Below, in pieces: positions 15,553-45,096 of a DNA stretch of 64,000 nucleotides. A program made the translations under genes and the position numbers. Positions within the stretch are counted from its first letter, which is position 1; each line of letters starts with the position of its first letter. The notes beneath the pieces were generated by a model that made no database searches, was not told where the DNA came from, and saw nothing but the letters and a program-made list of their open reading frames with translations. The DNA is taken from positions 1 through 64,000 of IMG/VR virus record IMGVR_UViG_3300023174_000038. One strand, given 5' to 3'.

Positions 15553-15588
15553 AACAAGTATTTATATGAGCAACTTAGGAATAGTATT

Positions 15589-19046: not shown

Positions 19047-19064
19047 AGTACCCTTATTTATGCT

Positions 19065-26031: not shown

Positions 26032-27132
26032 TTAATTACCTGCGTCTACAATGTACTTGCCGTATTTCTTGTGAAAGTCATCAAAGTTCTTCAACTGACT
26101 AGGTTCAATCGGTAACTTGTATGTCTTAAGCGCAATCTTAGCACCCATAACAACTAGTTCAGTCTCAAAGTTTGCCATAATGTAACTGAAGAAATTATCA
26201 GCCATTGTGTGAAACTCTTTACTAGAAACTTTCTTTGTTTCAAGTGCATCACGCAATTCATAGCACATTGAAATTGTCAATGAGTACATAGCAGAAATTT
26301 CTTTAACTGCAAGGTCCTTAACTTTACCTGACAAAATATCTGAGGGTTCGGGCATACGACCTGCTACTTTACGATGTGCCGCAAACTTAACAGCAAGACC
26401 TTCACCGACAGCACCTGAAATCAAATTGAACAATGTATCACTATCTGTATCATCTTCATCATTCAACAAGTCACTTACAAAACACCATGTACGAGGTGTA
26501 GCAAATGCTCTGCTTGATGATTTAGCATCAAAGTCATACAAATCTTGTTTAGCGAAACTCAAGTAACCCACAACGTCTTTGTGAATACCTTTGTTTACTG
26601 CCCAGTTCTGCCAAGAAGTAAAATCTGCTCTCATTTCTAAGTGTAAGAAACGATTAGCGAGGGGCATCGGCATACGATATGTAACACCTTTGTCACTATC
26701 ACGATTACCTGCCGCAACAATCACAACGTTATCGGGAAGTACATACTTACCAACTCTGCGATTCAAAATCAACTGATAGCCGGCCGCTTGTACTGCGGGA
26801 CTTGCTGAATTCATTTCATCTAAGAATAGAACAACGATAGGGTACTTGCTTGCTAGTTCATCATCAGGCAAGTCAACTGGTGCCGCCCAATCCATCTTAT
26901 TAATATCTTTATTAAAGAATGGGATACCACGAATGTCAGTAGGCTCCATTTGTGCCATACGCAAGTCAATCATGTAGCCACCGAGTTCTTCAGTAACTTC
27001 TGCTACAACTTCTGATTTACCGATGCCGGGAGGGCCCCACAAGAAAAGCGGGCGTTTTGCTTTAAATGCTTTAAGCATTGCTTTGCGAGTTTGTACACTA
27101 GTGATAGTGAGATTATCTGATACTGATGCCAT
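26032..27132 (-). CDS. MoxR-like AAA+ ATPase
   Basis: WGPPGIGKS, LFLDEMN, AAGNR, PLANRF, TPRTW; partner vWA gene downstream. Confidence 0.88.
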   Translation of the reverse strand: MASVSDNLTITSVQTRKAMLKAFKAKRPLFLWGPPGIGKSEVVAEVTEELGGYMIDLRMAQMEPTDIRGIPFFNKDINKMDWAAPVDLPDDELASKYPIVVLFLDEMNSASPAVQAAGYQLILNRRVGKYVLPDNVVIVAAGNRDSDKGVTYRMPMPLANRFLHLEMRADFTSWQNWAVNKGIHKDVVGYLSFAKQDLYDFDAKSSSRAFATPRTWCFVSDLLNDEDDTDSDTLFNLISGAVGEGLAVKFAAHRKVAGRMPEPSDILSGKVKDLAVKEISAMYSLTISMCYELRDALETKKVSSKEFHTMADNFFSYIMANFETELVVMGAKIALKTYKLPIEPSQLKNFDDFHKKYGKYIVDAGN

Positions 27133-27621: not shown

Positions 27622-27652
27622 ATTATAGACCCAAAACGATTTATTGTCAAAT
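27622..27652 (-). promoter_or_regulatory. Consensus sigma70 promoter
   Basis: TTGACA-ATAAATCGTTTTGGGTC-TATAAT. Confidence 0.85.
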
Positions 27653-27906: not shown

Positions 27907-27942
27907 AAGAGTATTATAACATGTTATGGTATTTATGTCAAC

Positions 27943-27966
27943 AAAAAAGGCTCCTAAGAGCCTTTT
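27943..27966 (-). terminator. Intrinsic terminator after the porin gene
   Basis: AAAAGGCTC-TTAG-GAGCCTTTTTT. Confidence 0.8.
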
Positions 27967-27985: not shown

Positions 27986-28891
27986 TTAAAAGCTATGAGA
28001 TAAACCAATACCAACTTGTTTAACATCATTTGTTTTACCACCAGCATCAACATTGCGATAAGCAACTAATACATTGGTACGCTTACTGAAAGCATAATTA
28101 ACACCTACGTTATATGCTTTAACTTCTCCTGCGGCTAAACCAGTTTTAGTAGCATAGCTACCTTTAACACTAACTTCATTAGTTACCGGAGCTGTTACAC
28201 CATAAAAATGACCTTTAGTTTTAACTAGACCTGCTTTATCATCACTTTGAATTGTAGACAATTCAAAACCAGCTAGTTTTCCACTAGCAGTTACTACATT
28301 GGTATAATCTGTACCAGATTCAAAACGTGCAACTGCGGCTGCAACAGGACCTAATTTTCCACCAATACTCCATGATGTTGCTTCTAACGTAGCAGGTGCT
28401 GTGTACATACTACGGTCATACGTAGCAAATACAGGACCAAAATTTGCGGCTAAGTAAGCACCATCACCAATACGCTTGTCACGTACATTAACTACATCAA
28501 CCGAAACGGATGAATAAAGCGCACCGCCAAATGGATCAGCGTTCTTCATAGTAATGTATTCACTGTGTTCTTTACGACCTAAATCAATACTACCAAATTT
28601 ATTAGAAAGACCAATTGTACTTTGACGATCACCTAATTGTGTTGTAGCCCCAGCTTTTGGATCATCGGCTACTACAGAAGTTTCAACAACTACTCTAGCT
28701 GTTAATCCATGTCCTAATTTTTCTTCAGCTTTGATGCCAAAACGACTTGAATCATTAACAAGAGAGTTAATTTTTACAGTACCTGTTTTAGTGCTATCAG
28801 CAAATTCACTGATTTTACCATATACTGATACTTGTGCTGTTGCAACCATTGTTGTTGCAGCCAATAATGTCGCTAATGCGATTTTTTTCAT
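27986..28891 (-). CDS. Gram-negative general porin (beta-proteobacterial type)
   Basis: Signal peptide, AQVSVYG, SRFGIKAEEKLGHGL, RQSTIGL..FGSIDLGR, YAFSKRT, C-terminal GIGLSHSF. Confidence 0.9.
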   Translation of the reverse strand: MKKIALATLLAATTMVATAQVSVYGKISEFADSTKTGTVKINSLVNDSSRFGIKAEEKLGHGLTARVVVETSVVADDPKAGATTQLGDRQSTIGLSNKFGSIDLGRKEHSEYITMKNADPFGGALYSSVSVDVVNVRDKRIGDGAYLAANFGPVFATYDRSMYTAPATLEATSWSIGGKLGPVAAAVARFESGTDYTNVVTASGKLAGFELSTIQSDDKAGLVKTKGHFYGVTAPVTNEVSVKGSYATKTGLAAGEVKAYNVGVNYAFSKRTNVLVAYRNVDAGGKTNDVKQVGIGLSHSF

Positions 28892-28975
28892 AAAATTTCC
28901 TTTTAAAAATAAACCTGATTAATCAGGCTAGACTAATATTTATAGTAATTTTTTCTACCCATATAAAATAGTTGT

Positions 28976-29668
28976 TTACGTAATAACGTCTGCTTTAACA
29001 TGAAAAATAGCTCTTTTTACCAAACTATCTATACTATTAACTAAGGGAATGCCGTTTTTTTCTACTTCTCTAACGGCTAATGGTAATTCTGTACAACCTA
29101 ATACTACTGCACTTGCTCCACGACTAATCAAACTGTCTACTACAGGCATTAACATATTATGTGATACAACCATATCCCCTGCCTTAATTAAATCTATAGC
29201 AGGTTGTACTATGTTGTTCATTTCTTCTTGACTGGGGACAATACAATCCCAATCAATTAAACGATTTTGATATAAGCCTAATTCAATTGTAGCTTGTGTT
29301 CCCATTATACCTATTGTACCCGTAACATTTATATCACGTAATACATCAGCTACACTATCTACAATATGTAAAATAGGAACTTTAAATTTAACTAATTCAT
29401 CATACCAGTAATGCGCTGTATTACAAGGGATAACAATCGTAGTACATCCAACTGCTTTCAATACTTGCATACCTTGTAGTAAATATGGTAGTGGTCTATC
29501 ATCACCATTACGTATACTTGTGCTACGATCAGGTACACGTGGCTCATTCCATAATACAAATGGAATATGTTCTTGGTCACAAGTTGCGGGGGTTTGTTGT
29601 ATAAGTCGTGTTATATATTCCGCACTTGCTGCCGGACCCATACCGCCTAGTATACCTAGACGTTTCAT
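28976..29668 (-). CDS. Aspartate/glutamate racemase family protein
   Basis: LGILGGMGP, catalytic cysteine pair IPCNTAH and LGCTELP. Confidence 0.92.
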   Translation of the reverse strand: MKRLGILGGMGPAASAEYITRLIQQTPATCDQEHIPFVLWNEPRVPDRSTSIRNGDDRPLPYLLQGMQVLKAVGCTTIVIPCNTAHYWYDELVKFKVPILHIVDSVADVLRDINVTGTIGIMGTQATIELGLYQNRLIDWDCIVPSQEEMNNIVQPAIDLIKAGDMVVSHNMLMPVVDSLISRGASAVVLGCTELPLAVREVEKNGIPLVNSIDSLVKRAIFHVKADVIT

Positions 29669-30270
29669 TTTTTGTTAAACAATAAACTAGATGCAATAAC
29701 CATAGCAGTTTGTGCGGCTTCTACATCTGTGGGTTGTTCTTTCCAACCTACACTAATCTGCCCAATGAAGACTCCGGGCTCTGCTGGTACACTGATACGA
29801 CACATATAGTTTACTCCGTATTCTTTATATACAAATCCAATAAGACTTTGTGGCTTTGTATATGGGCTACAGGGAATCTTACCTGACATCAATCCAATAA
29901 CATCGTTATTATTGTCATAGTTTTTACTAAACAACCCAACTTCTAATCCGTCATTTCTTTTATCTCTACCACCATTGCGTGTAGCTAAGTAAACAACTTT
30001 TCGTGTGTTAAGCAATGTATTGACTTCAAGAAAGGCAACCATTTCTACTTCAGTATTTTTTAATAAGAAATTATATGCGTCATCATACTTACCGTTCATC
30101 TTTGGTAATGCCTGTTGAGCACGGTAACTTGCTAAGAAGGCATCTTTTTCTGTATAAACTATCCAACCACCAAATCCTAGTACACAGAGAAACACAACGG
30201 TGAATAGGCGAAATGGACTTTCGCCTATATAGGTTAATAAACTAAAGAGAAAATCTTTAAGTTTGTCCAC
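29665..30270 (-). CDS. Single-TM membrane protein with a C-terminal GAF-like domain; resembles the T4 holin T architecture
   Basis: N-terminal amphipathic segment, TM at about aa 20-39, two Cys, C-terminal strand-strand-helix pattern; CDS is solid, function is inference. Confidence 0.55.
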   Translation of the reverse strand: MDKLKDFLFSLLTYIGESPFRLFTVVFLCVLGFGGWIVYTEKDAFLASYRAQQALPKMNGKYDDAYNFLLKNTEVEMVAFLEVNTLLNTRKVVYLATRNGGRDKRNDGLEVGLFSKNYDNNNDVIGLMSGKIPCSPYTKPQSLIGFVYKEYGVNYMCRISVPAEPGVFIGQISVGWKEQPTDVEAAQTAMVIASSLLFNKK

Positions 30271-31534
30271 CAGTAGCTACCTCTTTGTCGCAGACAAATG
30301 CTGTTACTGCAACATTGCCGTGTACGTGACTTGCTGTACGAATCATATCCATTAATGGATCAACGGCAATTAACAATACTAACACAGCTTCACTTGGTAG
30401 TTTTAATAAGTCACACACAACTGCTACTGTAGCAACTGTAAGAATACCTGTTGTACCTGCACTTGCTAATCCTGCCAAAATACTACCAAATAACACAACT
30501 GCTAGTCCCGTTAAGCCTAATGGAGCATCATAGATATTAGCAATGAATACTGTAGCAATAGCATAGTAAACAATACTACCAATACGATTGACTGTAAAAC
30601 TTAGTGGAACTGTTAGTTCAACACCACCTTTATCAAAGTGTAGTCTGTGTAATGATTCTTGTGCGTATGGAATACAAGCTAAACTACTACGTGAACTAAT
30701 AGCAACAATCAATGTTTCTTTAGTTTCACGGATAACAGTCATTAGACTTAATCCACTACGATACCAGATCATAGCAGTACCTGCGGCTACAACTAATAGT
30801 CCACCAACAAACTGTTGGAATACAAAGTCAAACATTGTTAAGAATATACCTACCCCTACCTTACCAACTTGGGCAGCAATCATTGCTAATAGAGCGATTG
30901 GTAAAAAGTAATTTAAGAATTTAAAGATACTGATACTTGCTTGTTGAATGCTTTTAAGTACTTCAACTAGCATCTTTTGACCTTCTGTTTTAAGATGTCC
31001 AAGAGCAACACCAAATATTAAACAGAAGATAACAATCTTCAAACTTTCACCATTGTTTAACGTGTTGAAAATGTTTTCTGGAATAAACTTCTCTGCCATC
31101 TTACCTGCACTTACTGCCGGTGCTACTGGCATTGGTTCTTTAAGAGTAATGTTTAAATCAGTACCACTGTCTTTGTTATTAACCAATACACCAAGTTGTG
31201 TTTTCTTTTCAGGAGTCATTTCAGTTCCTGTGACTAAAACTGTACCTACGCCAATTATTGCGGCTAAGAACATGCTACCAACAAAGCCTACAATGATTTT
31301 GCGTATTAATTGTTGGCTGCCTTCTTTTTGTAGTAAGCCAATGATACCAACTAGTATAGTTGCTAACAAGAATGGTAGTACAACAACTTTAAGTAAACTT
31401 ATATAGATACTACCAATACTATCAAAGTTAATGCTGAACTCGGGTGCGTAAACACCACTCAATATACCCACGATAATAGAACCAAGTATGGTCCACGGGC
31501 TTGTTAAAAACGTTTTTAAATGTGCGGTTGTCAT
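30257..31534 (-). CDS. Dicarboxylate/amino acid:cation symporter (DAACS, GltP-like)
   Basis: Multi-TM; LLK.VVLP, FIPENIF, SSRSS motif, DMIRTA in TM8. Confidence 0.9.
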   Translation of the reverse strand: MTTAHLKTFLTSPWTILGSIIVGILSGVYAPEFSINFDSIGSIYISLLKVVVLPFLLATILVGIIGLLQKEGSQQLIRKIIVGFVGSMFLAAIIGVGTVLVTGTEMTPEKKTQLGVLVNNKDSGTDLNITLKEPMPVAPAVSAGKMAEKFIPENIFNTLNNGESLKIVIFCLIFGVALGHLKTEGQKMLVEVLKSIQQASISIFKFLNYFLPIALLAMIAAQVGKVGVGIFLTMFDFVFQQFVGGLLVVAAGTAMIWYRSGLSLMTVIRETKETLIVAISSRSSLACIPYAQESLHRLHFDKGGVELTVPLSFTVNRIGSIVYYAIATVFIANIYDAPLGLTGLAVVLFGSILAGLASAGTTGILTVATVAVVCDLLKLPSEAVLVLLIAVDPLMDMIRTASHVHGNVAVTAFVCDKEVATGGQT

Positions 31535-31543
31535 ACTGAGTCC

Positions 31544-32361
31544 TTATTTCTTTTCAGCTTTGTAGCGATCCATTAACTTTTTAGTGTCAATATTACTGTA
31601 TTCATTTTTAATAACGTAATTAATAATGCTTAACAGTTGTAGTGATTTAGGATTTACTGCTACAGCAATATTATCTACGCTATCACTTATTGTAATTGTC
31701 TTAGTACTAATTGCGGCGTCTGGTTTCTCAAAAGCAATTTTCTTAATTTCAAACTCATCACGGTACGCAGCCGCAATATCACCCCTTGTAACTTTATCAA
31801 TGATTACATCCCATTTATCTTCTGGTAGAAATACAGCATTAGGGAAATTGATACGGGCAAATGTGTCATAGCTTGAGTTACGAATAAAACTTATTTTACC
31901 GTTAAAATCTCTAATTACTTGATATGTTTCTTTGCCTTGACTATTTTGACTTAGCCATAAACGATTAACAACTAAACTTTGTCTTAGCTTAATATAAGGA
32001 TCACTGAACCTAACAACCTGTAATCTAGGGCCGGTTACTGACAATTTGCTAACAGCAATATCGGCACGTCCGTCTCGTACTTGTTCAACAACTTCAGCAA
32101 AACTTTCTGCATCTCGTCTAAATTGTACTGGAACTCCGAGTAATACTCCAATTCTTCGTGCAATTTCAACGTCAAGACCATGGATATCATCCTCACCGCC
32201 ACTGAAGAAGGGAGGGTTATCTTTTTTGGTCATAGCCACAATAAGAACGTTTGCTTTCTTAATTGCGGCTATATCAGGGGGTAGTGGTACCGTAGAAGTT
32301 GGTAATTGTGCGTGGACAACTGAACTAATCAGTACAAATAATAATAGTAGTAGTTTTTTCA
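31544..32361 (-). CDS. Periplasmic amino-acid binding protein (family 3 SBP)
   Basis: Signal peptide MKKLLLL, NPPFF, GLDVEIA, GRADIAVS.LSVT..R, RFSDPY; start near 32361 (track start 32380). Confidence 0.85.
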
Positions 32362-32404
32362 TAGTGTTGTATTTATGCAAGGTTATATGTCAATTGTTTT
32401 ACTA

Positions 32405-32430
32405 ATAAAAAAGAGCCCCACAGAGCCCTT
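32405..32430 (-). terminator. Intrinsic terminator
   Basis: GC-rich hairpin AAGGGCTCTGTGGGGCTCTT followed by a T tract. Confidence 0.65.
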
Positions 32431-32512: not shown

Positions 32513-33160
32513 TTACTTTCCCAATAAGCTGTCAACCTTAGCCTCAGCAACATCTAAACGTGCTTCAATAGCGTCCAATATTGGATCTGCTGGAGTAGAA
32601 ACTGCTTCAACAATTTGTTGTGTTACTTCAGGAGAAACTTCTTCAACACCTGTAGCTGTAGCAATTACTTCAGCAACTGCGGCTGCTACTTCTTGTGCTA
32701 CTTCTGGGGCCGGAGTTGGCATATCAGCAACTGCTTGCATAATAGCTTCTGTAATTGCTACTGGATCAACTACAACTTCTGGCTCTGCTGTTACAACTGC
32801 CATAACTGCGGCTGCAACGATTTCAGCAACTTCCTCATGAGCAACGGCTGCTGCTTCAGTTTGTGCTATAACAACGTCAGCAACAATGTCAGCGGCTTCT
32901 GCATGGTCAGCACTTGGTGATAGTGCAACTACTTCTTCAACTTCTATCGGTGCATCTGCGGCTGGGGCAGAAATAATAGCATCAATATGTTCTTGAGTTT
33001 GAACAGCAATCAAGTGGTCAACTTGTACTTCAACTACGGATAATCTTGCGTCTAGTTCTTCAATGCTTATGGCACTGTCTGTGTTAACTGTTGTTCCAGT
33101 TAGGTTGGCTAATTTGGCTTCTACAGCTACTAATCTTGCGGCTAAATCTTCAAATCTCAT
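32513..33160 (-). CDS. Acidic Ala/Val/Glu-rich protein with three ARLxxxE coiled-coil motifs; likely -1 frameshift extension to 32460
   Basis: SD AAGGAG; ends G GGA AAG TAA followed by a hairpin. Confidence 0.75.
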   Translation of the reverse strand: MRFEDLAARLVAVEAKLANLTGTTVNTDSAISIEELDARLSVVEVQVDHLIAVQTQEHIDAIISAPAADAPIEVEEVVALSPSADHAEAADIVADVVIAQTEAAAVAHEEVAEIVAAAVMAVVTAEPEVVVDPVAITEAIMQAVADMPTPAPEVAQEVAAAVAEVIATATGVEEVSPEVTQQIVEAVSTPADPILDAIEARLDVAEAKVDSLLGK

Positions 33161-33242: not shown

Positions 33243-33953
33243 TCACGACCAATATTTAGATCCGTCTAAATTGTCCCAATATTTTTTATTGTTCCGATTA
33301 ACAAAATTCTTAACCAAATATTTACCCATACCAAGATATCCCATCTTTTTAAATCTACGACTATCCTGTCCAAAGTGATGCTTAATGATTCTAAATTTTT
33401 TTGGACTGTACTTTTTAGACAAGAAATAATCCTCAGATGTTACAAACTGTTCAGGGAATCCTCCATATTCAATAAACTTATCTCTACGGGTTAGCATAAA
33501 TGCCCCAACAGCAAATGGACTAAAGAATTTCAATGTATGATTTATTGTATTAAAAAGCGTAAATCCAATCATAGCTCTTGGGTCTTTATCATAAGATTTG
33601 ATGTTTAACCCAACAAGATCCAATTGTTTAGATTCCATAATATCTACTGCATCTTTTATTACATTATTCTTAAAGAAACGAACATCAGCATCAATGAATA
33701 AAATGTACGGCGTTGTGGCTAATTTAGCACCGTTATTTTTAGCAATAGAAACAGGGCCGCCACCAATAATTTCAACATTCAATGAATAACTATTATCTTT
33801 AATGACCTTTCTAGTATTATCAGTGGAACAGTCAGCAATGATAACTCTAGTATCACCAATATCTTGACTACGCAACGAATCTAACAAATGATGAATATAA
33901 TTTTCTTCATTCTTGCAAGGTACAACAATAGTAATTTTATCACTGAGTTTCAT
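33243..33953 (-). CDS. Family 2 glycosyltransferase
   Basis: TIVVPCKNEE, IIADCSTDNT, KNNGA, LFIDAD, GGF, SED; start MKLSDK at 33953. Confidence 0.9.
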   Translation of the reverse strand: MKLSDKITIVVPCKNEENYIHHLLDSLRSQDIGDTRVIIADCSTDNTRKVIKDNSYSLNVEIIGGGPVSIAKNNGAKLATTPYILFIDADVRFFKNNVIKDAVDIMESKQLDLVGLNIKSYDKDPRAMIGFTLFNTINHTLKFFSPFAVGAFMLTRRDKFIEYGGFPEQFVTSEDYFLSKKYSPKKFRIIKHHFGQDSRRFKKMGYLGMGKYLVKNFVNRNNKKYWDNLDGSKYWS

Positions 33954-34120
33954 TTTTTTATACACTTTCCTTCAATTTTAAATTGATTAAACTTTAACCA
34001 ATATGTCATACTTTGTAAACTTTGTTCACATGAGGATCGGTCCTGAAATGTCAGTTCTACCCGTCCCGGTATGTCCTTTGGGTCGTTCATATGAACTGCT
34101 AATATTAGTAATACCCACAT
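33950..34120 (-). CDS. 56-aa protein with hydrophobic N-terminus (MWVLLILAVHMNDPKDIPGRVELTFQDRSSCEQ...GKCIKK)
   Basis: Hand translation; SD GGAGAAGGA; ATGA overlap with the GT2 start; overlaps the tail of the upstream phosphoesterase gene. Confidence 0.55.
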   Translation of the reverse strand: MWVLLILAVHMNDPKDIPGRVELTFQDRSSCEQSLQSMTYWLKFNQFKIEGKCIKK

Positions 34121-34868
34121 TGTCCTTCTCCTTAGTCCAAGTAACTATTTCCCAACGTCCATCATGATGTTCTACTAATGCTGTACAACTTTCAACCCAG
34201 TCGCCATCATTCATATAGATAACACCATCTATAGTTTTTATTTCAGCATGGTGTATATGACCACATATCACACCATCAAAGCCACGCTTTTTACAATAGC
34301 CAGCAAGATTCTTTTCAAACTGAAACATAAAATCTATAGCTTTTTTTACTTTGTGTTTAAGGTATTTGCTAATACTAAAGTACCCAAAACCAAAACGATG
34401 ACGTATCCAATTGAACTTACTATTGAGCGATAAAATGAAATCATATGCTTTGTCTCCTAAAAATGCTAACCAAGGTGCTAGTCGTGTTATGCCATCAAAC
34501 AAATCACCATGTGTAACTAAATAATGCTTACCATCTATACCTATATGTTCTATTTGATTATGAATTTCTATAAGACCAAAACTAAAATCATATGGAATCA
34601 TAGGTCTTAAAAACTCATCGTGATTGCCAGCAATATAAACAACTCTAGTACCACGTTTAGCATGGCCTAACACTCTACGTACTACATTGGTATGGCTTTG
34701 TTTCCAGCGCCATTTGTTTTGCTGTATACGCCATGCATCAATAATATCACCTACTAGATAAAGTGTATCACATGTATTGTGCTTTAAAAAGTTATTTAAC
34801 CTATCAGCCTGACTATCTTTGGTACCTAAATGTACATCACTCACAAAAATAGAACGATATGTTTTCAT
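34026..34868 (-). CDS. Metallophosphoesterase of the PlcP/LpxH-like family
   Basis: SDVHLG, LVGDIID.W, GNHDE, HGDLFD, CGHIHH, YMNDGDWVESCTAL; start MKTYRS at 34868. Confidence 0.85.
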   Translation of the reverse strand: MKTYRSIFVSDVHLGTKDSQADRLNNFLKHNTCDTLYLVGDIIDAWRIQQNKWRWKQSHTNVVRRVLGHAKRGTRVVYIAGNHDEFLRPMIPYDFSFGLIEIHNQIEHIGIDGKHYLVTHGDLFDGITRLAPWLAFLGDKAYDFILSLNSKFNWIRHRFGFGYFSISKYLKHKVKKAIDFMFQFEKNLAGYCKKRGFDGVICGHIHHAEIKTIDGVIYMNDGDWVESCTALVEHHDGRWEIVTWTKEKDNVGITNISSSYERPKGHTGTGRTDISGPILM

Positions 34869-34872
34869 ATAG

Positions 34873-34907
34873 TATTTATTGAGAGATATGTGACAAATTA
34901 GTGACAA
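34873..34907 (-). promoter_or_regulatory. Pho-box-like direct repeat plus TAAATA
   Basis: TTGTCAC-TAAT-TTGTCAC, 11 nt, TAAATA, 4 nt, ATG. Confidence 0.72.
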
Positions 34908-34909
34908 TC

Positions 34910-35530
34910 TTATTTGTTAGCTAAAGGATTGTCCATAGCTTTTTGTATTTTGCTATCAACTTCTCTCTTTAGCGTCTCTACTTCACGGTTGATTTCTCTA
35001 CGTGCCGCAGTAAATTCACTGTTAATTTCTTTACGGGTTGATTCCATATCTTTGCGAATTTGATTAGCTTCGTTCCTTGCTCTCTCCAAGTCTTCTCGCA
35101 CAGCTTTACGCATATCACGCATTTCTGATTCTGTTTCACGTTGTGCATTCTTAACACTACGTTCTACTTGTTCAGTTACAGTTTCATTACGGCGAATATC
35201 GTTCTTTAAATCGGTTTTGATATCACGTGTGTAATCAGCACCCTTTTGACTATTTTCTTCAATAACTGCTAAACGCTTATCAAATCCAGATAAGTCTGGC
35301 GCAGAGTATTCAGCTATCTTTTTCTTCATACCCACATAGTCTTTATAGACTTCAAATGTTCCATAAAGTCCACCTAATATAGATGATACGATAGTAAACG
35401 CTACCATTAGTTTAGCTGGAGTAAACTCATACCCACCAATACTAATTACAGTATCTTTACTTGCGTATTTCTTAGCGGCGGCTTCAAGTTCATCAACTTT
35501 AGCATTTACGTTTTTAATTTCTTCACTCAT
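34910..35530 (-). CDS. Membrane-anchored coiled-coil protein
   Basis: One TM (LMVAFTIVSSILGGLYG), long R/E/K heptad region, ends DNPLANK. Confidence 0.75.
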   Translation of the reverse strand: MSEEIKNVNAKVDELEAAAKKYASKDTVISIGGYEFTPAKLMVAFTIVSSILGGLYGTFEVYKDYVGMKKKIAEYSAPDLSGFDKRLAVIEENSQKGADYTRDIKTDLKNDIRRNETVTEQVERSVKNAQRETESEMRDMRKAVREDLERARNEANQIRKDMESTRKEINSEFTAARREINREVETLKREVDSKIQKAMDNPLANK

Positions 35531-35541
35531 TTTATTTTCCT

Positions 35542-37209
35542 TTATTTATATTGTAGATTCACCAAATCTTGGTGTAGTTTATCGCTAGACAATTGACGCA
35601 AAACTCTTGCGTTGTCTACATTTACTTGATTTTTGTAAATCTCTTTTGGTGCATAGAACGGTGCATCTGCTAATGCAAATGAATATGCTTGATAGCCTGC
35701 AGGTTGTGTTGCCATTCTTGCTATATCAACACCGCCGGCTAATTCATTTGGCTGAACATTTCTATTCACTGTTTCTGTCTTTTGTTCTTGTGTATTTGTA
35801 TTTTGTACAATTGGTCTTTCTTCAATTGCATCATTCAATACTGAACGTGAACCCATTTTAATACCTTCATTCTGAGGTACTTCTATTTCAGGAGTAGTAG
35901 CATTACGACCCTGCGGTGATTGTAAACTATACATTTCAGTTGATCCAAATGAAACATTATTACTCATTGTATTATTAGGATCAGAAAATATAGTTTGAGT
36001 TGGTGAACGTAGTCCTCCAAGATTGATTACACTAGTCTGTGTAGTATTTACAATAGCAACAATAGATGATTGTGAGGATGTATTTATTTGTGTAGTTGAT
36101 GATCCAGTAGTTGTCATACTGCTAGTAACACTTTGTGCAGTTAGTGAACCAGCAACTGATTCTGCTTGTTCTCGTGCTTGCTGTGCATCTTTTGCGGCGG
36201 CTGACTCTGCTGCCTGAACAACTGCCTTAGCTTCATTGCCTATTCTAGTTTGGTTACTACTAATCATACTTAATACATTACCTAGACTAGGACCGGCTTT
36301 ACTATCATCTTTAGCAGATTTATTTTCACTAGGACGAGGCTGAGATCCTGCAGGAGGAGGATTTCCTGGCGGGGGAAGGGGCCCTGCTTGTTGAGAACCA
36401 TTAGGTGGGGGAGGACTACCTGGGGGAGGAGGTGGAGGTGCGCCATCTTCTGGTGGAGGTGGGGGAGGTGCATCCGCTACTGCTACTGGAGTAGGTGCTA
36501 ATTTAGCAAGAGCATCTGAGTAACCTCTACAACTAGGTGAGTATAATGGGTTAGTAGCACAAGGGTCAACACTATACTTCAAACTAAAATTTACATTAAT
36601 AATTTCAGGACCATATGGTCCAACCCAGTAGTTGTTGTCTCTTCCCACAAATCCATACTGAGCATTACCTAAATCAGGAGTAGCATATGCTGACTTAAAT
36701 GTTTCTGACCAATAGAACTGAGTCCAACCATATCTACGATTTACATCATAGTTGTATGCTTCTACTACCTTTGTGTTTGTGTTGTTGTATATGTTTACAT
36801 AAGCCTTTAGATAATCTTGTCTGCCATCATCCCATCCATTACCGTTCTTAGCAGTAAAGCCAAAGTTAAAACCATTCACTTGTAATCCTGTGCCACTATT
36901 AGGTAGCGCATTTTTAATAGCAACAGTTTGATTTAAGTCTGTTAGTCCATATGAAAAATTAATGACATTAGACCCTGCGCCCCAGGCGGCAACTCTGGGC
37001 AATGGACCACAATAACCAGGGCCGCCCGGCTCCCAACATGTAAGCTGTTGACCAATAGTACCGGCATTTTGCCATGTACTTGTAGTAGCTGTGGCATTAC
37101 TGGTAAAATTGACCAAATTACCAGTTGTTGTTACATCCTGACTATTAGAATATCTTATTGACAATAAGACCAAGAACAGCCCCAATGCCAATTTTCTTAT
37201 AAGTGTCAT
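35542..37209 (-). CDS. Secreted/surface protein with a beta-rich N-domain, Pro-rich linker and low-complexity stalk
   Basis: Signal peptide; DPCATNPLYSPSC; PPPPPP runs. Confidence 0.75.
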   Translation of the reverse strand: MTLIRKLALGLFLVLLSIRYSNSQDVTTTGNLVNFTSNATATTSTWQNAGTIGQQLTCWEPGGPGYCGPLPRVAAWGAGSNVINFSYGLTDLNQTVAIKNALPNSGTGLQVNGFNFGFTAKNGNGWDDGRQDYLKAYVNIYNNTNTKVVEAYNYDVNRRYGWTQFYWSETFKSAYATPDLGNAQYGFVGRDNNYWVGPYGPEIINVNFSLKYSVDPCATNPLYSPSCRGYSDALAKLAPTPVAVADAPPPPPPEDGAPPPPPPGSPPPPNGSQQAGPLPPPGNPPPAGSQPRPSENKSAKDDSKAGPSLGNVLSMISSNQTRIGNEAKAVVQAAESAAAKDAQQAREQAESVAGSLTAQSVTSSMTTTGSSTTQINTSSQSSIVAIVNTTQTSVINLGGLRSPTQTIFSDPNNTMSNNVSFGSTEMYSLQSPQGRNATTPEIEVPQNEGIKMGSRSVLNDAIEERPIVQNTNTQEQKTETVNRNVQPNELAGGVDIARMATQPAGYQAYSFALADAPFYAPKEIYKNQVNVDNARVLRQLSSDKLHQDLVNLQYK

Positions 37210-38287: not shown

Positions 38288-38347
38288 CCTCTAGAGATAG
38301 TATTTATTTGCTTATTAGTTGAGAAATATCACACTTTATTAAATAGG

Positions 38348-38367
38348 AAAGGCTCCTAAGAGCCTTT
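38348..38367 (-). terminator. Terminator hairpin ending the tmRNA coding piece
   Basis: AAAGGCTC-TTAG-GAGCCTTT, identical to 27946-27965. Confidence 0.7.
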
Positions 38368-38681
38368 ACTGAGTTTCTGTTACGAGGTATGTCTTACCCT
38401 AGGCTGCGTTTAGGCTGCCAATGCGAACTGTGAGTCGTTTGCGTTTACTTTTTTTGCTTCTACGGCCGAGTTCCCCCAACCCTAACGGCTTCTGCTTTGC
38501 CGAGCGCCTAATCTTAACTACTATCCTGTCGGTCGATCCCAAGTCACCCCCATCATAAAAACACAATACCAAAGTAAATTTACACGGAATACCAAAGTAA
38601 ATTTATGCTCTTATGGTGGAGGTGGGGAGAATTGAACTCCCGTGTCGCCAGTGTTTCCTAAGCAGGTTTACGCTGTTCTTA
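38368..38681 (-). ncRNA. ssrA: Two-piece (circularly permuted) tmRNA: acceptor piece about 38681-38614, intervening segment 38613-38552, coding piece from 38551; tag ANDSQFALAA at 38442-38410
   Basis: T-arm GGGAG-TTCAATT-CTCCC and CACCTCC-ACCA end; 5' GGGGGTG pairs with CACCTCC including the G3-U alanine wobble; tag frame GCA AAC GAC TCA CAG TTC GCA TTG GCA GCC TAA. Confidence 0.92.
38565..38605. repeat. 18-bp direct repeat (AATACCAAAGTAAATTTA x2, 23-nt period) in the tmRNA intervening segment
   Basis: 38565-38582 identical to 38588-38605. Confidence 0.9.
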
Positions 38682-39314
38682 CTATTTAGTCAACCTACCC
38701 CTAGATAGATTGAATAAAGTAATTTTATCATCATCTGGTTTTAAATAAAAGTTAATTTGGGAATTATTATACCAATGTTTACCGTATGCATTACTATTCT
38801 TATTCTTTCTGTTGTCTCTCCATTCCGATGTAGGTATCCATCCGGATGGAATTTCATTTTTGTAGTACATTTTACGATTAACTAATTCAACTGACGATTT
38901 TTCTACACACCAAACTTTTCCAAAATTAGAGTTATTTTCTTTTTGTTGGTGCTTTCTTTCTTTAAAAGTTTTATTTCTCTTTTCCATTGCAGATTGGGTT
39001 TTTGACAACTTACTTGCTCGGGCTTGTTGTTCTTGATTTATCGCAAAATTAGTTTTAGTTTGAACATTTTTAAATGGATTAGGATGTAATTGTCTGCATT
39101 TTTTACCAGCTTCACTTTGTCTAATTTTTACTAATTCTTCTTTAGGACTTAATTTTGCTAAACCCTGCCATGCAACATAATCTTGCCAACGACCATATTC
39201 TTCGTATAACTTGCGATGTGCCTCTGCATGTTCATCAATAGATAATTCTATAAGGTTCCTAGGATCATCTGTCCCGCCTGCGTGTTTAGGAATAATATGG
39301 TGTTTATGGCTCAT
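38682..39314 (-). mobile_element. Free-standing HNH homing endonuclease
   Basis: HHIIPKHAGGTDDPRNLIEL...EHAEAH; two NS(N)xxGKxW repeats; own ATAAATA 5 nt before ATG 39314. Confidence 0.85.
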
Positions 39315-39332
39315 GCAAGTATTTATGCCTGC

Positions 39333-39381
39333 CGCACCCCCGTCCAAGACACTTTTCTCTTTGCTTCATACAGCAATAACT
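39333..39381 (-). pseudogene. Truncated relic of a second tmRNA acceptor piece
   Basis: TAAATA (39394-39389), then GCTGTATGAAGCAAAGAGAAAAGTGTCTTGGACGGGGGTGCG breaking off in the presumed T-loop at the HNH promoter. Confidence 0.55.
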
Positions 39382-43542: not shown

Positions 43543-45096
43543 TTATTTGTTATAATTATTTAATATATCAGATAGCCATGGTATATAATTTTCTAATTTA
43601 TGACCTCTAATGTCATCTAACCTACGGGTATCGTCAGCTAGCTTTGGTAACAGATGGCTATTATCTTTAGCAAACATATAGTTGATTAAACCACTATAGC
43701 TATGCCTAAATATATTACCCATTTCTAGTCCATATTTTTCATCTATTTCTTTGTAAAAAAATTCATATGCTTCTCGTATTTGATTTTTTACATTAACGGG
43801 TAGTACTTGTATACTCATGGGAGACGGGCCCTCTAGTACGTGATAGCTAGGCGTTTTTCTAATTCTTTTATAATTTTTTTCTATTAACCATTTAGAAATT
43901 TCTAAAAAATGATATACATTGAATATACTTATAGTAGTAGATATTGTACCATAAATAGATTTAGTTGGATTATTACCTAACACATCTAAATTTTGTTCTA
44001 GTGCATCCCAAGTACTTGGATATCTTAGATAGTATGCCAAATCCTCAATTGCATCTATACTGCATCCTATTCCTACGGATCTGAACTCTTCCCATAAGTT
44101 ATATAGCTTATTTGGTATAGCAAACATATTTGAATTGTAATCCAAATGAACACGATTGCTATGACCCATATCTATAATTTTTTGTAATAATTTAAAATGT
44201 ATTTTATTAATTGTAGGTTCGCCGCCGGTAAAATAATATCGGTCAATATAGGGAATTAGTTTTTCAATTTGATTCCAGAATTCATCCGATTCATACCATT
44301 CAAAATCCGAAGAATCAATGGTATAATTATTATTTTTTTTGATTACATTATACGTTTTTCCCCCATAAAAAGACATAGGAGCTGAGGAAGGCTTTTCTCC
44401 CTCGTATGACATGAAAACAAAATCGTCATACCACAGACTGCTATCGGTCGGGCCGCAATATCTACATTTTAAATTGCATAAATTTCCAAAACGAATATCA
44501 ATATATTTTATTGGAAACTTTTCTATATCTATACTTCCATCATTAGCAGTGTTATCAATGAATCCTGTATGTCCGTATGTATTAATACTGTGTAATCTTT
44601 TACTAGATAAACCGGTGTCTTCTTCTTTCCAACATAAATTACATGACGGATGTTTTTCTCCGCGCAACATACTTGCACGTAATTCTTTAAATACTGTGTT
44701 ATTTCGTGATTGATTTATATCAGTATTTTTAACGTTTAACATTTCTCCGTTCTCTATTAGTTTACCGTACGGGTAGTATATCTGTTGACAACAAATTCTT
44801 AAATCTCCATTTTGTTGTATGCCAGTAGAGACCCATGGTATTGGGCAAAACGTTGAATTTTTTGGAAGGTCCTGCATTTGAGGATTTATTTGATTCAGTC
44901 TTGTTTTTGCTAGCTCAATTGAAGCTTCTGAGCAATGAGGATTTTTCATACCTGCTACTATAACTTCTGATTCAACATCATGTGTTATCATAGCTGTTAT
45001 TAATTCAGGAAAATCTGTAATTGTAATAAGTTCAACTCGTTCATTAGAATCAAAACAGTTGTGAAGTTTATTAAACCAATATTCACTGGTATTCAT
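43543..45096 (-). CDS. Radical SAM protein with an N-terminal Twitch/SPASM-like domain
   Basis: FCPIPW..GDLRICC..SCNLCW; CNLKCRYC; FTGGEP. Confidence 0.88.
   Translation of the reverse strand: MNTSEYWFNKLHNCFDSNERVELITITDFPELITAMITHDVESEVIVAGMKNPHCSEASIELAKTRLNQINPQMQDLPKNSTFCPIPWVSTGIQQNGDLRICCQQIYYPYGKLIENGEMLNVKNTDINQSRNNTVFKELRASMLRGEKHPSCNLCWKEEDTGLSSKRLHSINTYGHTGFIDNTANDGSIDIEKFPIKYIDIRFGNLCNLKCRYCGPTDSSLWYDDFVFMSYEGEKPSSAPMSFYGGKTYNVIKKNNNYTIDSSDFEWYESDEFWNQIEKLIPYIDRYYFTGGEPTINKIHFKLLQKIIDMGHSNRVHLDYNSNMFAIPNKLYNLWEEFRSVGIGCSIDAIEDLAYYLRYPSTWDALEQNLDVLGNNPTKSIYGTISTTISIFNVYHFLEISKWLIEKNYKRIRKTPSYHVLEGPSPMSIQVLPVNVKNQIREAYEFFYKEIDEKYGLEMGNIFRHSYSGLINYMFAKDNSHLLPKLADDTRRLDDIRGHKLENYIPWLSDILNNYNK

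What the first reader, a model, noticed from the sequence alone, without database searches (positions are those of the whole stretch)
28976..32400. Coupled amino-acid binding/import/racemisation operon in a phage
A family-3 periplasmic binding protein, a DAACS symporter, a single-TM protein and an Asp/Glu racemase are tightly spaced or overlapping (9-nt gap, 14-nt overlap, ATGA overlap) behind ATAAATA, with the porin next. An SBP paired with a secondary symporter and no ABC permease or ATPase is atypical. One model is scavenging D-Glu/D-Asp from peptidoglycan of lysed cells for L-amino acids and nucleotide synthesis. Another is producing or sensing D-amino acids as a signal.
Basis: partly seen in the sequence, partly recalled or inferred. 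Interest (0 to 1): 0.75.

Follow-up and report, generated by a model that had tools for sequence, protein, structure and literature searches.

The report
Phage amino-acid uptake operon with holin-like insert
A widespread lake jumbo phage carries a bacterial-type operon (binding protein, unusual secondary transporter, amino-acid racemase) with a phage holin-like membrane protein inserted in it; the binding-protein/transporter pair may be an undescribed transporter class.

Summary
Four minus-strand genes are tightly coupled (9-nt gap, 14-nt overlap, ATGA overlap): a family-3 SBP, a DAACS/SDF transporter, a 201-aa single-TM protein (X201) and an Asp/Glu-type racemase. They lie behind CATAAATA in a 348.7-kb freshwater jumbo phage.

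The block is not decaying. The same gene order holds in about 45 related viral loci, with dN/dS of 0.06-0.13.

SBP+DAACS is a pre-existing, rare bacterial gene pair. In five sampled bacterial genomes the order SBP-DAACS-racemase matches the phage order. This DAACS subfamily lacks the canonical cation-site acidic residues (NMDGT reads NRIGS, with an invariant Arg).

X201 is absent from every bacterial version. It belongs to a phage-only family (phrog_31287). It has one TM helix and a GAF-like domain, and its best structural matches are T4 holin T. Distant relatives sit beside endolysins.

The porin has its own promoter and is not a conserved part of the cassette.

Best reading: a late-expressed, host-derived, SBP-dependent uptake and racemisation module for an acidic amino acid (D/L-Asp-like, or possibly cysteate), with a T-type holin-like gene embedded in it. 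Substrate, SBP dependence and X201's role remain inferred.

The parts
32411..32430 (-). Terminator-like hairpin plus T-run that closes the upstream gene and insulates the cassette
   Evidence: 8-pair stem, 4 G-C pairs, T-run; sequence read.
32370..32377 (-). CATAAATA, a T4-late-promoter-like element 7 nt before the SBP start codon (TATAAATA in most relatives). Implies a near-leaderless late transcript.
   Evidence: It is the only conserved upstream element in 30 distinct loci. Genome-wide the motif is depleted, and 10 of 27 coding-strand copies lie 3-8 nt before an ATG ORF, including the terminase. A gp55-like match lies at G000:87076-87318, E 2.3e-5.
31544..32362 (-). Periplasmic family-3 solute-binding protein, 272 aa, signal peptide MKKLLLLLFVLISSVVHA|Q, no lipobox Cys
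   Evidence: PF00497 at 1.5e-17. Nearest solved relatives are amino-acid ABC binding proteins. Residues invariant from phage to bacterial homologues include T110, R113, R201, D202, R83 and R134. dN/dS 0.064.
30257..31534 (-). Variant DAACS/SDF (SLC1-type) transporter, 425 aa. NMDGT is replaced by NRIGS. TM8 reads D-M-I-R-T-A-S-H-V-H-G-N.
   Evidence: PF00375 at 4e-66. Alignment to solved aspartate transporters. Motifs invariant in 35 phage orthologues and shared with bacterial subfamily members. dN/dS 0.070.
29665..30270 (-). X201: phage-only single-pass membrane protein with a GAF-like domain, T4 holin T-like (class III holin-like). GTG start, SD AAGAGG upstream.
   Evidence: phrog_31287. AF2 pLDDT 95.5. 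Top VIA-align hits are T4 holin T, Z 12.3-12.7. BFVD hits to annotated class III holins. ESM features score 0.98 to a cluster that contains PF11031 members. Invariant Cys134/Cys157. Relatives lie beside endolysins. Absent from the bacterial operons. dN/dS 0.072.
28976..29668 (-). PLP-independent two-Cys amino-acid racemase, 230 aa, Asp-racemase/CuyB-like
   Evidence: PF01177 at 3.2e-38. NF052483 CuyB 211.7 bits against a cut-off of 190; TIGR00035 169 bits. Closest solved relatives are aspartate racemases (3S7Z, 1JFL). Catalytic Cys82/Cys192 and Arg/Lys ligands invariant in 34 orthologues. dN/dS 0.126.
28912..28944 (-). Perfect TATAAATA (28937-28944) followed by a weak hairpin (28912-28929): the porin's own late-type promoter and leader
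27986..28891 (-). Outer-membrane porin (Porin_4), signal peptide, C-terminal Phe. A neighbour of the cassette, not a fixed member. Followed by a hairpin plus T-run at about 27943-27966.
   Evidence: PF13609 at 5.7e-23. In relatives it is only 47-49% identical, 1.6-3 kb away or absent. Sequence read.

Best explanation
The block is a late-expressed auxiliary uptake-and-conversion cassette in a freshwater T4-core jumbo phage that probably infects a betaproteobacterium (Burkholderiales).

Proposed mechanism:
1. The secreted family-3 SBP captures an acidic amino acid in the periplasm. D/L-aspartate-like is most likely; cysteate or glutamate are alternatives.
2. The SBP hands the ligand to a variant DAACS elevator-type transporter. 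This transporter has lost the acidic cation-site residues and carries an invariant Arg in place of the NMDGT Met, so transport is probably SBP-dependent and not Na+/H+-coupled in the usual way.
3. The cytoplasmic two-cysteine racemase converts the imported enantiomer into the form the host's metabolism can use.

Origin: SBP+DAACS, and in some bacteria SBP+DAACS+racemase, is a pre-existing bacterial unit. The phage version is a mosaic of that unit with a racemase from a different Burkholderiales branch.

Inserted gene: a phage-only gene, X201, lies between transporter and racemase and is translationally coupled to both. It encodes a single-pass inner-membrane protein with a periplasmic GAF-like domain of the T4 holin T (class III holin) type. 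It is most likely a lysis or lysis-timing protein that uses the same late promoter. Its function is probably autonomous and not a transporter subunit.

Shown: gene identities, junctions, conservation, purifying selection, bacterial synteny, motif changes, fold resemblance.
Inferred: substrate, direction of racemisation, SBP dependence, loss of cation coupling, late timing, X201's holin activity.
For: - Gene content and junctions.
- Phage identity and kin (PA5oct, Atu_ph07, Phosso terminase at 48-50%).
- Host clue: beta-type tmRNA, RF01850, 91 bits. The closest cellular SBP+DAACS pair, at 65-66% identity, is on a genuinely bacterial Burkholderiales contig.
- Cassette order is conserved in 46 viral loci while the flanks are rearranged.
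- dN/dS 0.06-0.13 with dS above 1.
- Bacterial synteny: the DAACS subfamily is in 10 of 401 sampled genomes of the phylum. An SBP_bac_3 gene is adjacent in all 9 assessable genomes. A racemase follows directly downstream in G037, G072, G669, G393 and G362.
- DAACS motif changes are invariant in phage copies and shared with bacteria.
- The SBP keeps amino-acid-type ligand residues plus extra invariant Arg residues.
- Racemase: catalytic Cys pair invariant; nearest solved relatives are Asp racemases; the sister bacterial clade sits beside an Amidohydro_3 enzyme and amino-acid ABC genes.
- SDF transporter plus CuyB racemase clustering is known in Bilophila (PMC11193023).
- X201. Contexts beside endolysins or after tail fibres. 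It stands alone in another phage at 67% identity. A Straboviridae phage with an X201 relative has no PF11031 holin T, while T4 as positive control scores 1.3e-119.
- Late-type promoter.
- RNA-library contigs from four lake metatranscriptomes cover SBP-DAACS-X201 and bridge every junction.
Against: - No substrate, transport or enzyme assay exists. All specificity statements are inferences from homology.
- The racemase passes NCBIfam's cysteate-racemase equivalog cut-off. BwCuyB was never tested on aspartate. Asp versus cysteate is therefore open.
- X201 has no sequence-level homology to T4 T (hhalign probability 3.6%; no PF11031 hit). Generic GAF domains score almost as well structurally (Z 11-12 against 12.7).
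- No endolysin was located near the cassette, and none of the PF00959 type in the genome.
- X201's fixed position and translational coupling could instead mean that it works with the transporter.
- The complex prediction gave no verdict.
- Late timing rests on analogy with T4 and a weak gp55-like match.
- The metatranscriptome contigs cannot prove a single transcript or exclude DNA carry-over.
- The bacterial surveys are samples with 1.5-kb flanks only.
Confidence: 0.6

Rival explanations
1. Sulfonate version. The cassette imports L-cysteate (a sulfonate analogue of aspartate) and racemises it to D-cysteate, as in the Bilophila CuyB/CuyA pathway. A host D-cysteate sulfo-lyase then yields pyruvate, ammonium and sulfite.
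For: The phage racemase and five further phage orthologues score 207-212 bits on the NF052483 'cysteate racemase CuyB' equivalog (cut-off 190). The operon-linked bacterial racemases score 219-231. The model passes its cut-off in only 1 of 14 control genomes. In B. wadsworthia an SDF transporter is clustered with CuyB (PMC11193023).
Against: The phage genome has no PF00291 enzyme. None of five operon-bearing bacterial genomes has a DcyD/CuyA-family protein above cut-off, and two have essentially none. The nearest solved relatives are aspartate racemases. The phage racemase's sister clade sits beside an Amidohydro_3 enzyme and amino-acid ABC genes, which points to D-amino-acid metabolism. CuyB was never tested against aspartate.
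Confidence: 0.2
2. X201 is not a lysis protein. It is an accessory or regulatory subunit of the phage transporter: a membrane-anchored periplasmic GAF-like sensor that gates, stabilises or retargets the DAACS/SBP system in the infected cell.
For: It sits invariably between DAACS and racemase, with a 14-nt overlap and an ATGA overlap, in about 45 loci. Its dN/dS is as low as the transporter's. GAF domains are typically small-molecule sensors, and generic GAF domains match nearly as well as holin T.
Against: Bacterial versions of the operon work without it. Close and distant relatives occur with no transporter nearby: between terS and terL at 67% identity, beside endolysins, after tail fibres. 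Three loci tolerate 1-2 kb inserts between X201 and the racemase. The complex prediction gave no verdict, which is evidence neither way.
Confidence: 0.2
3. Signalling or lysis-clock version. The cassette mainly senses a periplasmic D-amino acid or other cue, for example from lysed neighbours, and adjusts lysis timing through the T-like protein. Uptake and racemisation serve to sense or clear the signal.
For: A T4-T-like protein is embedded in an operon with a periplasmic ligand-binding protein. In T4, the periplasmic domain of T is the target of the antiholin RI (titles of PDB entries 6PSK/6PX4). The promoter is of the late type.
Against: There is no evidence of SBP-X201 contact; one search gave no verdict. 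The SBP-DAACS pair has an obvious transport role in bacteria that lack X201. Nothing identifies the ligand.
Confidence: 0.08
4. Passenger DNA: a recently captured, decaying host fragment with no role in infection.
For: The genes are of cellular type and lie in a region rich in host-like envelope genes (porin, GT2, LpxH-like).
Against: About 600 near-full-length X201 homologues and 46 viral loci keep the cassette intact across divergence with dS above 1 and dN/dS of 0.06-0.13. Catalytic and binding-site motifs are invariant. A conserved promoter element sits immediately upstream. RNA-library contigs cover the cassette.
Confidence: 0.02

Closest known systems
Bacterial SBP_bac_3 - variant DAACS - racemase operons (uncharacterised; e.g. 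loci L060/L065, L077-L079 in Burkholderiales and other members of the phylum)
   Same: Same three families in the same order and with tight spacing. The same DAACS subfamily signature: invariant Arg in place of the NMDGT Met, a hydrophobic residue in place of Asp, the TM8 Arg kept, and no acidic residue at the second cation site. The racemases pass the same CuyB HMM.
   Different: No X201 gene. 35-37% identity only, except the SBP+DAACS pair of one low-GC Burkholderiales MAG at 65-66%, which lacks the racemase. The phage racemase belongs to a different branch from the operon-linked ones.
SBP-dependent secondary transporters: TRAP (DctPQM), TTT (TctABC), and the recently proposed TAXI-GltS class (PMC12344293)
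   Same: A soluble periplasmic binding protein is encoded next to, and co-transcribed with, an elevator-type secondary transporter and no ABC components. The 2025 paper calls SBP association with elevator transporters 'an emerging theme'.
   Different: The SBP is family 3 (the ABC-type amino-acid binder fold), not DctP, TAXI or TctC. The membrane part is DAACS/SLC1, not DctQM, TctAB or GltS. DAACS is not mentioned in that paper, and two literature searches found no description. SBP dependence here is inferred from synteny only.
Bilophila wadsworthia cysteate cluster (SDF transporter, CuyB racemase, RidA, CuyA lyase; PMC11193023)
   Same: An SDF/DAACS importer is clustered with a PF01177 racemase that the same NCBIfam model recognises.
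   Different: No SBP is reported there. The phage has no CuyA or RidA, and no CuyA is adjacent in the bacterial SBP-DAACS-racemase operons.
T4 holin T (gene t; class III holin; PDB 6PSK/6PX4/6PXE)
   Same: About 200-220 aa. Short N-terminus, a single TM helix, and a C-terminal alpha/beta GAF-like domain of about 145 aa. T4 T gives the best structural matches (Z 12.3-12.7, model 58-201 against T 78-218). X201 has a conserved Cys pair. Relatives are placed after tail-fibre genes or beside endolysins, as t is after genes 37/38..
   Different: No detectable sequence homology. X201 sits inside a transporter operon, not in a lysis or tail-fibre context. No RI-like antiholin or adjacent endolysin was identified. 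Holin activity is untested.
Cyanophage pstS and other nutrient-uptake auxiliary metabolic genes
   Same: A phage carries a host-derived periplasmic binding protein to boost nutrient acquisition during infection (established knowledge; e.g. PMC10976474, listed).
   Different: Cyanophage PstS relies on the host's own ABC permease. Here the phage brings the binding protein, the membrane transporter and a downstream enzyme as one operon.

Membership tests
DAACS / SDF (PF00375, SLC1-type glutamate/aspartate/dicarboxylate transporters) | Full-length match to the family profile above the curated cut-off | tested here: met
   PF00375, 224 bits against a cut-off of 27.9, profile positions 3-384 of 387. 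Homology to solved GltPh, GltTk and EAAT chains.
DAACS / SDF (PF00375, SLC1-type glutamate/aspartate/dicarboxylate transporters) | Canonical NMDGT motif in TM7 and an acidic residue at the TM8 cation site (cation coupling; residue roles from established GltPh/GltTk structural work) | tested here: not met
   NRIGS replaces NMDGT, and ...RTASHVHGN replaces ...RTxxNVxGD. The changes are invariant in 35 phage orthologues and shared by bacterial subfamily members. It is a divergent subfamily, not a canonical Na+/H+ symporter.
DAACS / SDF (PF00375, SLC1-type glutamate/aspartate/dicarboxylate transporters) | TM8 Asp/Arg pair that binds the amino group and the acidic side chain of the substrate | tested here: met
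   D396 and R399 are invariant in the phage copies. The Arg is invariant across the whole subfamily, while the Asp varies in some bacterial members.
Family-3 periplasmic solute-binding proteins (PF00497) | Profile match, export signal, and conserved Arg and Asp ligands for the alpha-carboxylate and alpha-ammonium groups | tested here: met
   PF00497 at 64 bits against 26.4. The signal peptide is visible in the sequence. T110/R113 and R201/D202 are invariant from phage to bacteria. Mapping of these residues onto the pocket is by analogy, not by structure.
Family-3 periplasmic solute-binding proteins (PF00497) | Partnered with ABC permease and ATPase genes | tested here: not met
   No PF00528 permease is found in the phage genome. 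In phage and bacteria the neighbour is a DAACS gene.
SBP-dependent secondary transporters (TRAP / TTT / TAXI-GltS) | SBP gene adjacent to and co-transcribed with a secondary (elevator-type) transporter across many genomes | tested here: met
   9-nt gap in the phage. Adjacent in all 9 assessable bacterial genomes that carry the subfamily. RNA-library contigs bridge the junction.
SBP-dependent secondary transporters (TRAP / TTT / TAXI-GltS) | SBP of the DctP, TAXI or TctC type with a DctQM, TctAB or GltS membrane component | tested here: not met
   The SBP is PF00497 and the membrane part is PF00375. If functional, it is a different class.
SBP-dependent secondary transporters (TRAP / TTT / TAXI-GltS) | Transport requires the SBP | not testable with these tools
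   Needs reconstitution or genetics.
Asp/Glu racemase superfamily (PF01177); cysteate racemase CuyB (NF052483) | Profile match and two catalytic cysteines | tested here: met
   PF01177 at 132 bits. Cys82 and Cys192 are invariant in 34 orthologues.
Asp/Glu racemase superfamily (PF01177); cysteate racemase CuyB (NF052483) | Score above the NCBIfam equivalog cut-off for CuyB | tested here: met
   211.7 bits against 190. Other phage copies score 207-212. The margin is small, and aspartate was never tested for BwCuyB.
Asp/Glu racemase superfamily (PF01177); cysteate racemase CuyB (NF052483) | Genomic association with the D-cysteate sulfo-lyase CuyA | tested here: not met
   No PF00291 in the phage. 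No lyase next to the bacterial operon. No DcyD/CuyA-family hit above cut-off in five operon-bearing genomes.
T4 holin T / class III holins (PF11031) | Sequence-profile membership | tested here: not met
   No PF11031 match in the genome at E<=1. The same model finds T4 t at 1.3e-119. hhalign of the X201 family against T4 T gives probability 3.6%.
T4 holin T / class III holins (PF11031) | Architecture and fold: one N-proximal TM helix plus a C-terminal alpha/beta domain of about 145 aa resembling T's periplasmic domain | tested here: met
   AF2 pLDDT 95.5. T4 T chains are ranks 1-3, Z 12.3-12.7, but generic GAF domains follow closely. BFVD hits to annotated class III holins. ESM feature score 0.98 to a cluster that contains PF11031 members.
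T4 holin T / class III holins (PF11031) | Lysis-cassette context or holin activity | tested here: inconclusive
   Distant relatives overlap or neighbour endolysin genes in three small-phage lineages. In this phage the gene lies in a transporter operon, and no endolysin was located. Activity is not testable here.
T4-type late promoter | TATAAATA element upstream of late genes together with a gp55-type sigma factor | tested here: inconclusive
   The motif is conserved before the SBP start and before the terminase, and is depleted elsewhere. The gp55-like match is weak: E 2.3e-5, 31% over 86 residues. No transcription start data.

The most novel reading that the evidence does not exclude
The cassette is a ligand-gated lysis clock. 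The periplasmic SBP, loaded with an acidic D-amino acid released from the cell walls of lysed neighbours, contacts the periplasmic GAF-like domain of the T-type holin-like X201, much as antiholin RI contacts T in T4 lysis inhibition. Lysis timing is then set by a chemical cue of nearby lysis or host density, while the DAACS transporter and racemase drain and recycle the signal. Independently of this, the family-3 SBP plus cation-site-less DAACS pair would be a new class of SBP-dependent elevator transporter.
Probability: 0.07. Interest if true: 0.9.

Novelty: new variant of a known kind. Interest (0 to 1): 0.62.

Why it matters
1. Phage nutrient-uptake genes described so far are mostly single parts that plug into host machinery, such as cyanophage pstS. 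Here an abundant lake jumbo-phage lineage carries a self-contained capture, import and conversion operon. This suggests that acidic or D-amino acids in lake dissolved organic matter matter for phage production.

2. Following the phage gene led to a conserved bacterial pair: a family-3 SBP with a DAACS transporter that lacks the usual cation-site residues. A 2025 paper states that only TRAP and TTT, plus its newly proposed TAXI-GltS class, use soluble SBPs, and asks for further classes to test whether the elevator mechanism is what allows SBP coupling. This pair is a ready candidate.

3. A holin-T-like gene is fixed inside a metabolic operon. This gives a concrete system for asking whether lysis timing and nutrient status are linked.

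4. It also assigns a likely role to phrog_31287, a phage family with no annotated function.

Tried and rejected
- Megablast of the region against cultured phages found nothing.
- The search for homologous proteins for X201 and the racemase returned only near-identical phage relatives. The lists were saturated and gave no cellular context.
- Pfam and NCBIfam give nothing for X201 or its distant relatives. Weak hits of X201 to long Flg_new repeat proteins were judged to be compositional or beta-repeat noise.
- hhalign of the X201 family against T4 T gave probability 3.6%, so no homology is claimed.
- The three-chain complex prediction (DAACS + SBP + X201, with X201 as the partner) gave no verdict (score 0.00). 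It is not used as evidence either way.
- The phage porin was not found in the candidate host-like MAG G001, and neither was the racemase. The MAG is incomplete, so these are weak negatives.
- The apparent 726-aa 'fusion' frame in L061 is a high-GC read-through artefact. The SBP and DAACS are in different frames.
- No exact RNA run holds the window; only relatives' RNA is available.
- The degrading-fragment hypothesis was rejected on dN/dS and motif invariance.

Full report
**Observation.** The window is the first 64 kb of a 348,701-bp IMG/VR virus record, judged complete by CheckV, with GC about 36%. It is a phage: its large terminase matches phrog_36964 at 8.6e-106, and it has a DnaB-type helicase. 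The terminase is 48-50% identical to those of the T4-core jumbo phages PA5oct, Atu_ph07 and Phosso.

On the minus strand, one search lists:
- SBP, 31544-32380
- DAACS, 30257-31534
- a 201-aa protein (X201), 29665-30270
- racemase, 28976-29668
- porin, 27986-28891

Pfam confirms SBP_bac_3 (1.5e-17), SDF (4e-66), Asp_Glu_race (3.2e-38) and Porin_4 (5.7e-23). X201 has no Pfam family. Reading the DNA confirms the 9-nt gap, the 14-nt overlap (GTGGACAAACTTAA, with AAGAGG upstream) and the ATGA overlap.

The true SBP start is the ATG at 32362. That start and the element [T/C]ATAAATA 7 nt before it are the only things conserved upstream in 30 distinct related loci. A terminator-like hairpin precedes the cassette. 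All cassette genes are single-copy, and the genome has no ABC permease.

**The cassette is a conserved functional unit.** X201 has about 600 close relatives in metagenomes, on contigs up to 326 kb, and 46 loci in IMG/VR. tblastn of all neighbourhood proteins shows the order SBP-DAACS-X201-racemase wherever the flank is long enough. The flanks themselves are shuffled: cc206, GT2, the LpxH-like gene and the porin move or are absent. The porin is present in only some loci, at 47-49% identity and 1.6-3 kb away. In the window it has its own perfect TATAAATA and leader hairpin.

Pairwise Nei-Gojobori estimates against the window give median dN/dS of 0.064 (SBP), 0.070 (DAACS), 0.072 (X201) and 0.126 (racemase), at dS above 1. 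The degrading-fragment alternative is therefore refuted.

The phage occurs in lake and other freshwater metagenomes. Contigs from four lake metatranscriptome libraries (relatives at 80-95% identity) cover SBP, DAACS and X201, and single contigs bridge each junction. This is consistent with expression as a unit but does not prove it.

**Origin of the SBP-DAACS pair.** A scan of species-representative genomes with a DAACS alignment found an adjacent SBP+DAACS pair at 65-66% identity in a Burkholderiales MAG. Its neighbours are a CoxSML-type molybdenum dehydrogenase, CoxD/E and an MscS-cNMP channel, so the contig is truly bacterial. It has no X201 and no racemase. The phage's tmRNA is of the betaproteobacterial type (RF01850, 91 bits), so a Burkholderiales host is plausible.

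Sampling gave these counts:
- 4 of 301 genomes of that order carry the DAACS subfamily.
- 10 of 401 genomes of the phylum carry it.
- In all nine assessable genomes an SBP_bac_3 gene is adjacent.
- In G037, G072, G669, G393 and G362 a PF01177 racemase follows directly, in the phage order.
- X201 is in none of them.

A LysR regulator and amino-acid-related genes flank one such operon.

**The transporter is a distinct subfamily.** Against solved aspartate transporters, the TM7 signature NMDGT reads NRIGS, and TM8 reads D-M-I-R-T-A-S-H-V-H-G-N instead of D-x-x-R-T-x-x-N-V-x-G-D. These residues are invariant in 35 phage orthologues. Across phage and bacterial members:
- the Arg replacing the Met is invariant;
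- the cation-binding Asp is always replaced by a hydrophobic residue;
- the TM8 Arg is invariant;
- the second cation-site Asp is never acidic.

From established GltPh/GltTk structural work, those acidic residues coordinate Na+, and the TM8 Arg binds the substrate's acidic side chain. I infer an anionic amino-acid substrate and altered or lost cation coupling, with the SBP possibly supplying affinity and directionality as in TRAP systems.

A 2025 paper states that only TRAP and TTT were known to use soluble SBPs before its proposed TAXI-GltS class. It calls SBP-elevator association an emerging theme and does not mention DAACS. My literature searches found no description of SBP-DAACS systems. 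From my own knowledge, Bacillus subtilis DctB is a binding protein that acts with DctA/DctS in sensing, not transport. A sensory role for an SBP next to a DAACS gene therefore has precedent.

**The SBP.** It has a signal peptide without a lipobox. It keeps T110/R113 and R201/D202, plus R83 and R134, invariant from phage to distant bacterial homologues. Its nearest solved relatives are amino-acid ABC binding proteins. This fits an acidic amino-acid ligand, but it is an inference.

**The racemase.** The two catalytic cysteines and the Arg/Lys ligands are invariant. The nearest solved relatives are aspartate racemases (3S7Z, 1JFL). NCBIfam's CuyB (cysteate racemase) equivalog is passed by the phage enzymes (207-212 bits against 190) and by the operon-linked bacterial ones (219-231 bits). 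The model is selective in the control genomes. In Bilophila, CuyB is clustered with an SDF transporter.

Against a cysteate pathway:
- the phage has no PF00291 enzyme;
- the operon-bearing bacteria show no CuyA/DcyD-family protein above cut-off, and two have essentially none;
- BwCuyB was never assayed on aspartate.

A maximum-likelihood tree places the phage racemases (support 100/99) as sister (99/96) to a Burkholderiales clade with no adjacent transporter in the flanks fetched. Two members of that clade lie downstream of an Amidohydro_3 enzyme (the Pfam family that includes N-acyl-D-amino-acid deacylases) and beside amino-acid ABC ATPases. The operon-linked racemases form a separate clade (97/86). 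The phage cassette therefore looks like a mosaic, and transporter-racemase juxtaposition appears to have arisen more than once. That argues for a functional link between import and racemisation.

**X201.** It belongs to phrog_31287, a family of unknown function. The exhaustive representative search finds only proteins of about 200 aa without Pfam domains. Their contexts are all phage:
- overlapping the start of a PF00959 endolysin;
- a few genes from a GH108 endolysin;
- between a tail-fibre gene and a lysozyme in a 34-kb phage;
- after tail-fibre genes, which is where T4 keeps t;
- between terS and terL at 67% identity in another small phage;
- standalone in Cronobacter phage S13.

The AF2 model (pLDDT 95.5) has an N-terminal helix, a TM helix at 19-40 and a GAF-like domain. 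Foldseek finds GAF domains and T4 holin T. After VIA-align re-ranking, the three T4 T entries are ranks 1-3 (Z 12.3-12.7), covering the whole domain, with generic GAF domains at 11-12. BFVD returns full-length viral proteins of the same size, including ones annotated as holin, class III holin and T holin. ESM-Atlas features link X201 at 0.98 to a cluster that contains PF11031 members. Two cysteines are invariant; T4 T is known to need a periplasmic disulfide (my own knowledge).

Sequence homology to T is not demonstrable. Phage S13, a member of the Straboviridae, has an X201 relative but no PF11031 hit, whereas T4 scores 1.3e-119 in the same search. This is consistent with the family standing in for T.

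I conclude that X201 is a T-type holin-like membrane protein. I rate an actual lysis or lysis-timing role at about 0.5, a transporter-accessory role at about 0.2, and leave the rest open.

**Timing.** TATAAATA is depleted genome-wide: 14 per strand against about 35-40 expected from composition. On the coding strand, 23 of 27 [T/C]ATAAATA copies precede an ORF. Ten of them do so by only 3-8 nt, including the terminase. A weak gp55-like match exists. I infer late, near-leaderless transcription by analogy with T4. This suits both a holin-like gene and a demand for amino acids and precursors late in infection.

**Verdict.** The most interesting outcomes are a candidate new SBP-dependent DAACS transporter class, a complete uptake-plus-racemase operon in a phage, and a holin-T-like gene fixed inside that operon. 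Substrate, SBP dependence, ion coupling and X201's activity all need experiments.

Noticed in passing
window 38344-38717 (-): Phage-encoded tmRNA of the betaproteobacterial type (RF01850, 91 bits; it also matches the permuted-tmRNA model), tag ANDSQFALAA. An ORF resembling a homing endonuclease (38682-39347, phrog_655) abuts it.
   Followed up: partly
window 27913-27941 and 27622-27650 (-): Two perfect sigma-70 consensus promoters (TTGACA, 17 nt, TATAAT; 12 of 12 matches) directly after the porin terminator, ahead of small ORFs. The phage seems to use both host-type and T4-late-type promoters.
   Followed up: no
G000 genome-wide; e.g. window 15559-15566 (terminase), 35543-35550, 19055-19062, 39320-39327: A recurrent [T/C]ATAAATA, then 3-12 nt, then an ATG. 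This implies leaderless or near-leaderless late mRNAs, including for the large terminase.
   Followed up: partly
window 34910-35530 (-): cc206, a membrane-anchored coiled-coil protein with no family match. It lies directly next to the cassette in most related loci (upstream in the same orientation, or inverted downstream) but is separated from it here by three inserted genes. It has its own TATAAATA.
   Followed up: partly
window 33243-34907 (-): Envelope-type morons beside the cassette: a GT2 glycosyltransferase (GtrB-like O-antigen conversion phrogs) and an LpxH-like metallophosphoesterase (UDP-2,3-diacylglucosamine diphosphatase models, below cut-off). Together with the porin they form a cell-surface remodelling neighbourhood.
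   Followed up: no
window 32513-33160 and 35542-37209 (-): A 215-aa Ala/Glu/Val-rich low-complexity protein and a 555-aa secreted protein with a long proline-rich segment. Neither has any family match.
   Followed up: no
window 43543-49973 and 57050-63916 (-): Two radical-SAM-domain proteins in a run of large genes, and a giant ORF of 2288 aa or more that runs to the window edge.
   Followed up: no
L002 and L031 (IMGVR_UViG_3300027749_002876, 524,565 bp): One 524-kb viral contig holds two diverged copies of the whole cassette (X201 at 97% and 72% identity to the window). It is either a chimeric assembly of two related phages or a genuine duplication.
   Followed up: no
L057 11828-15416 (Burkholderiales MAG G001): A second, very divergent SBP_bac_3 gene plus two tandem DAACS-like genes (22-27% identity). 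Their TM7/TM8 motifs are further degenerated and the TM8 Arg is lost. The region has unusually low GC (33%).
   Followed up: partly
L058 (2,980-bp contig in an Alphaproteobacteria MAG): A fragment carrying DAACS (88%) and X201 (72%). It is almost certainly a phage contig mis-binned into a bacterial MAG, and the DAACS match is split into two pieces.
   Followed up: no
L020, L021, L023 between X201 and the racemase: Inserts of 1-2 kb encoding glycine-rich 'GSGWxIGPGW' proteins, with paralogues at about 129-133 kb and 226 kb in G000. This looks like a mobile or expanding gene family.
   Followed up: partly
window 26032-27132 (-): A MoxR-like AAA+ ATPase (phrog_1297, 8.9e-99) just downstream of the porin region. 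CoxD-type MoxR/VWA genes also flank the bacterial SBP-DAACS pair in L057, which is probably coincidental.
   Followed up: no
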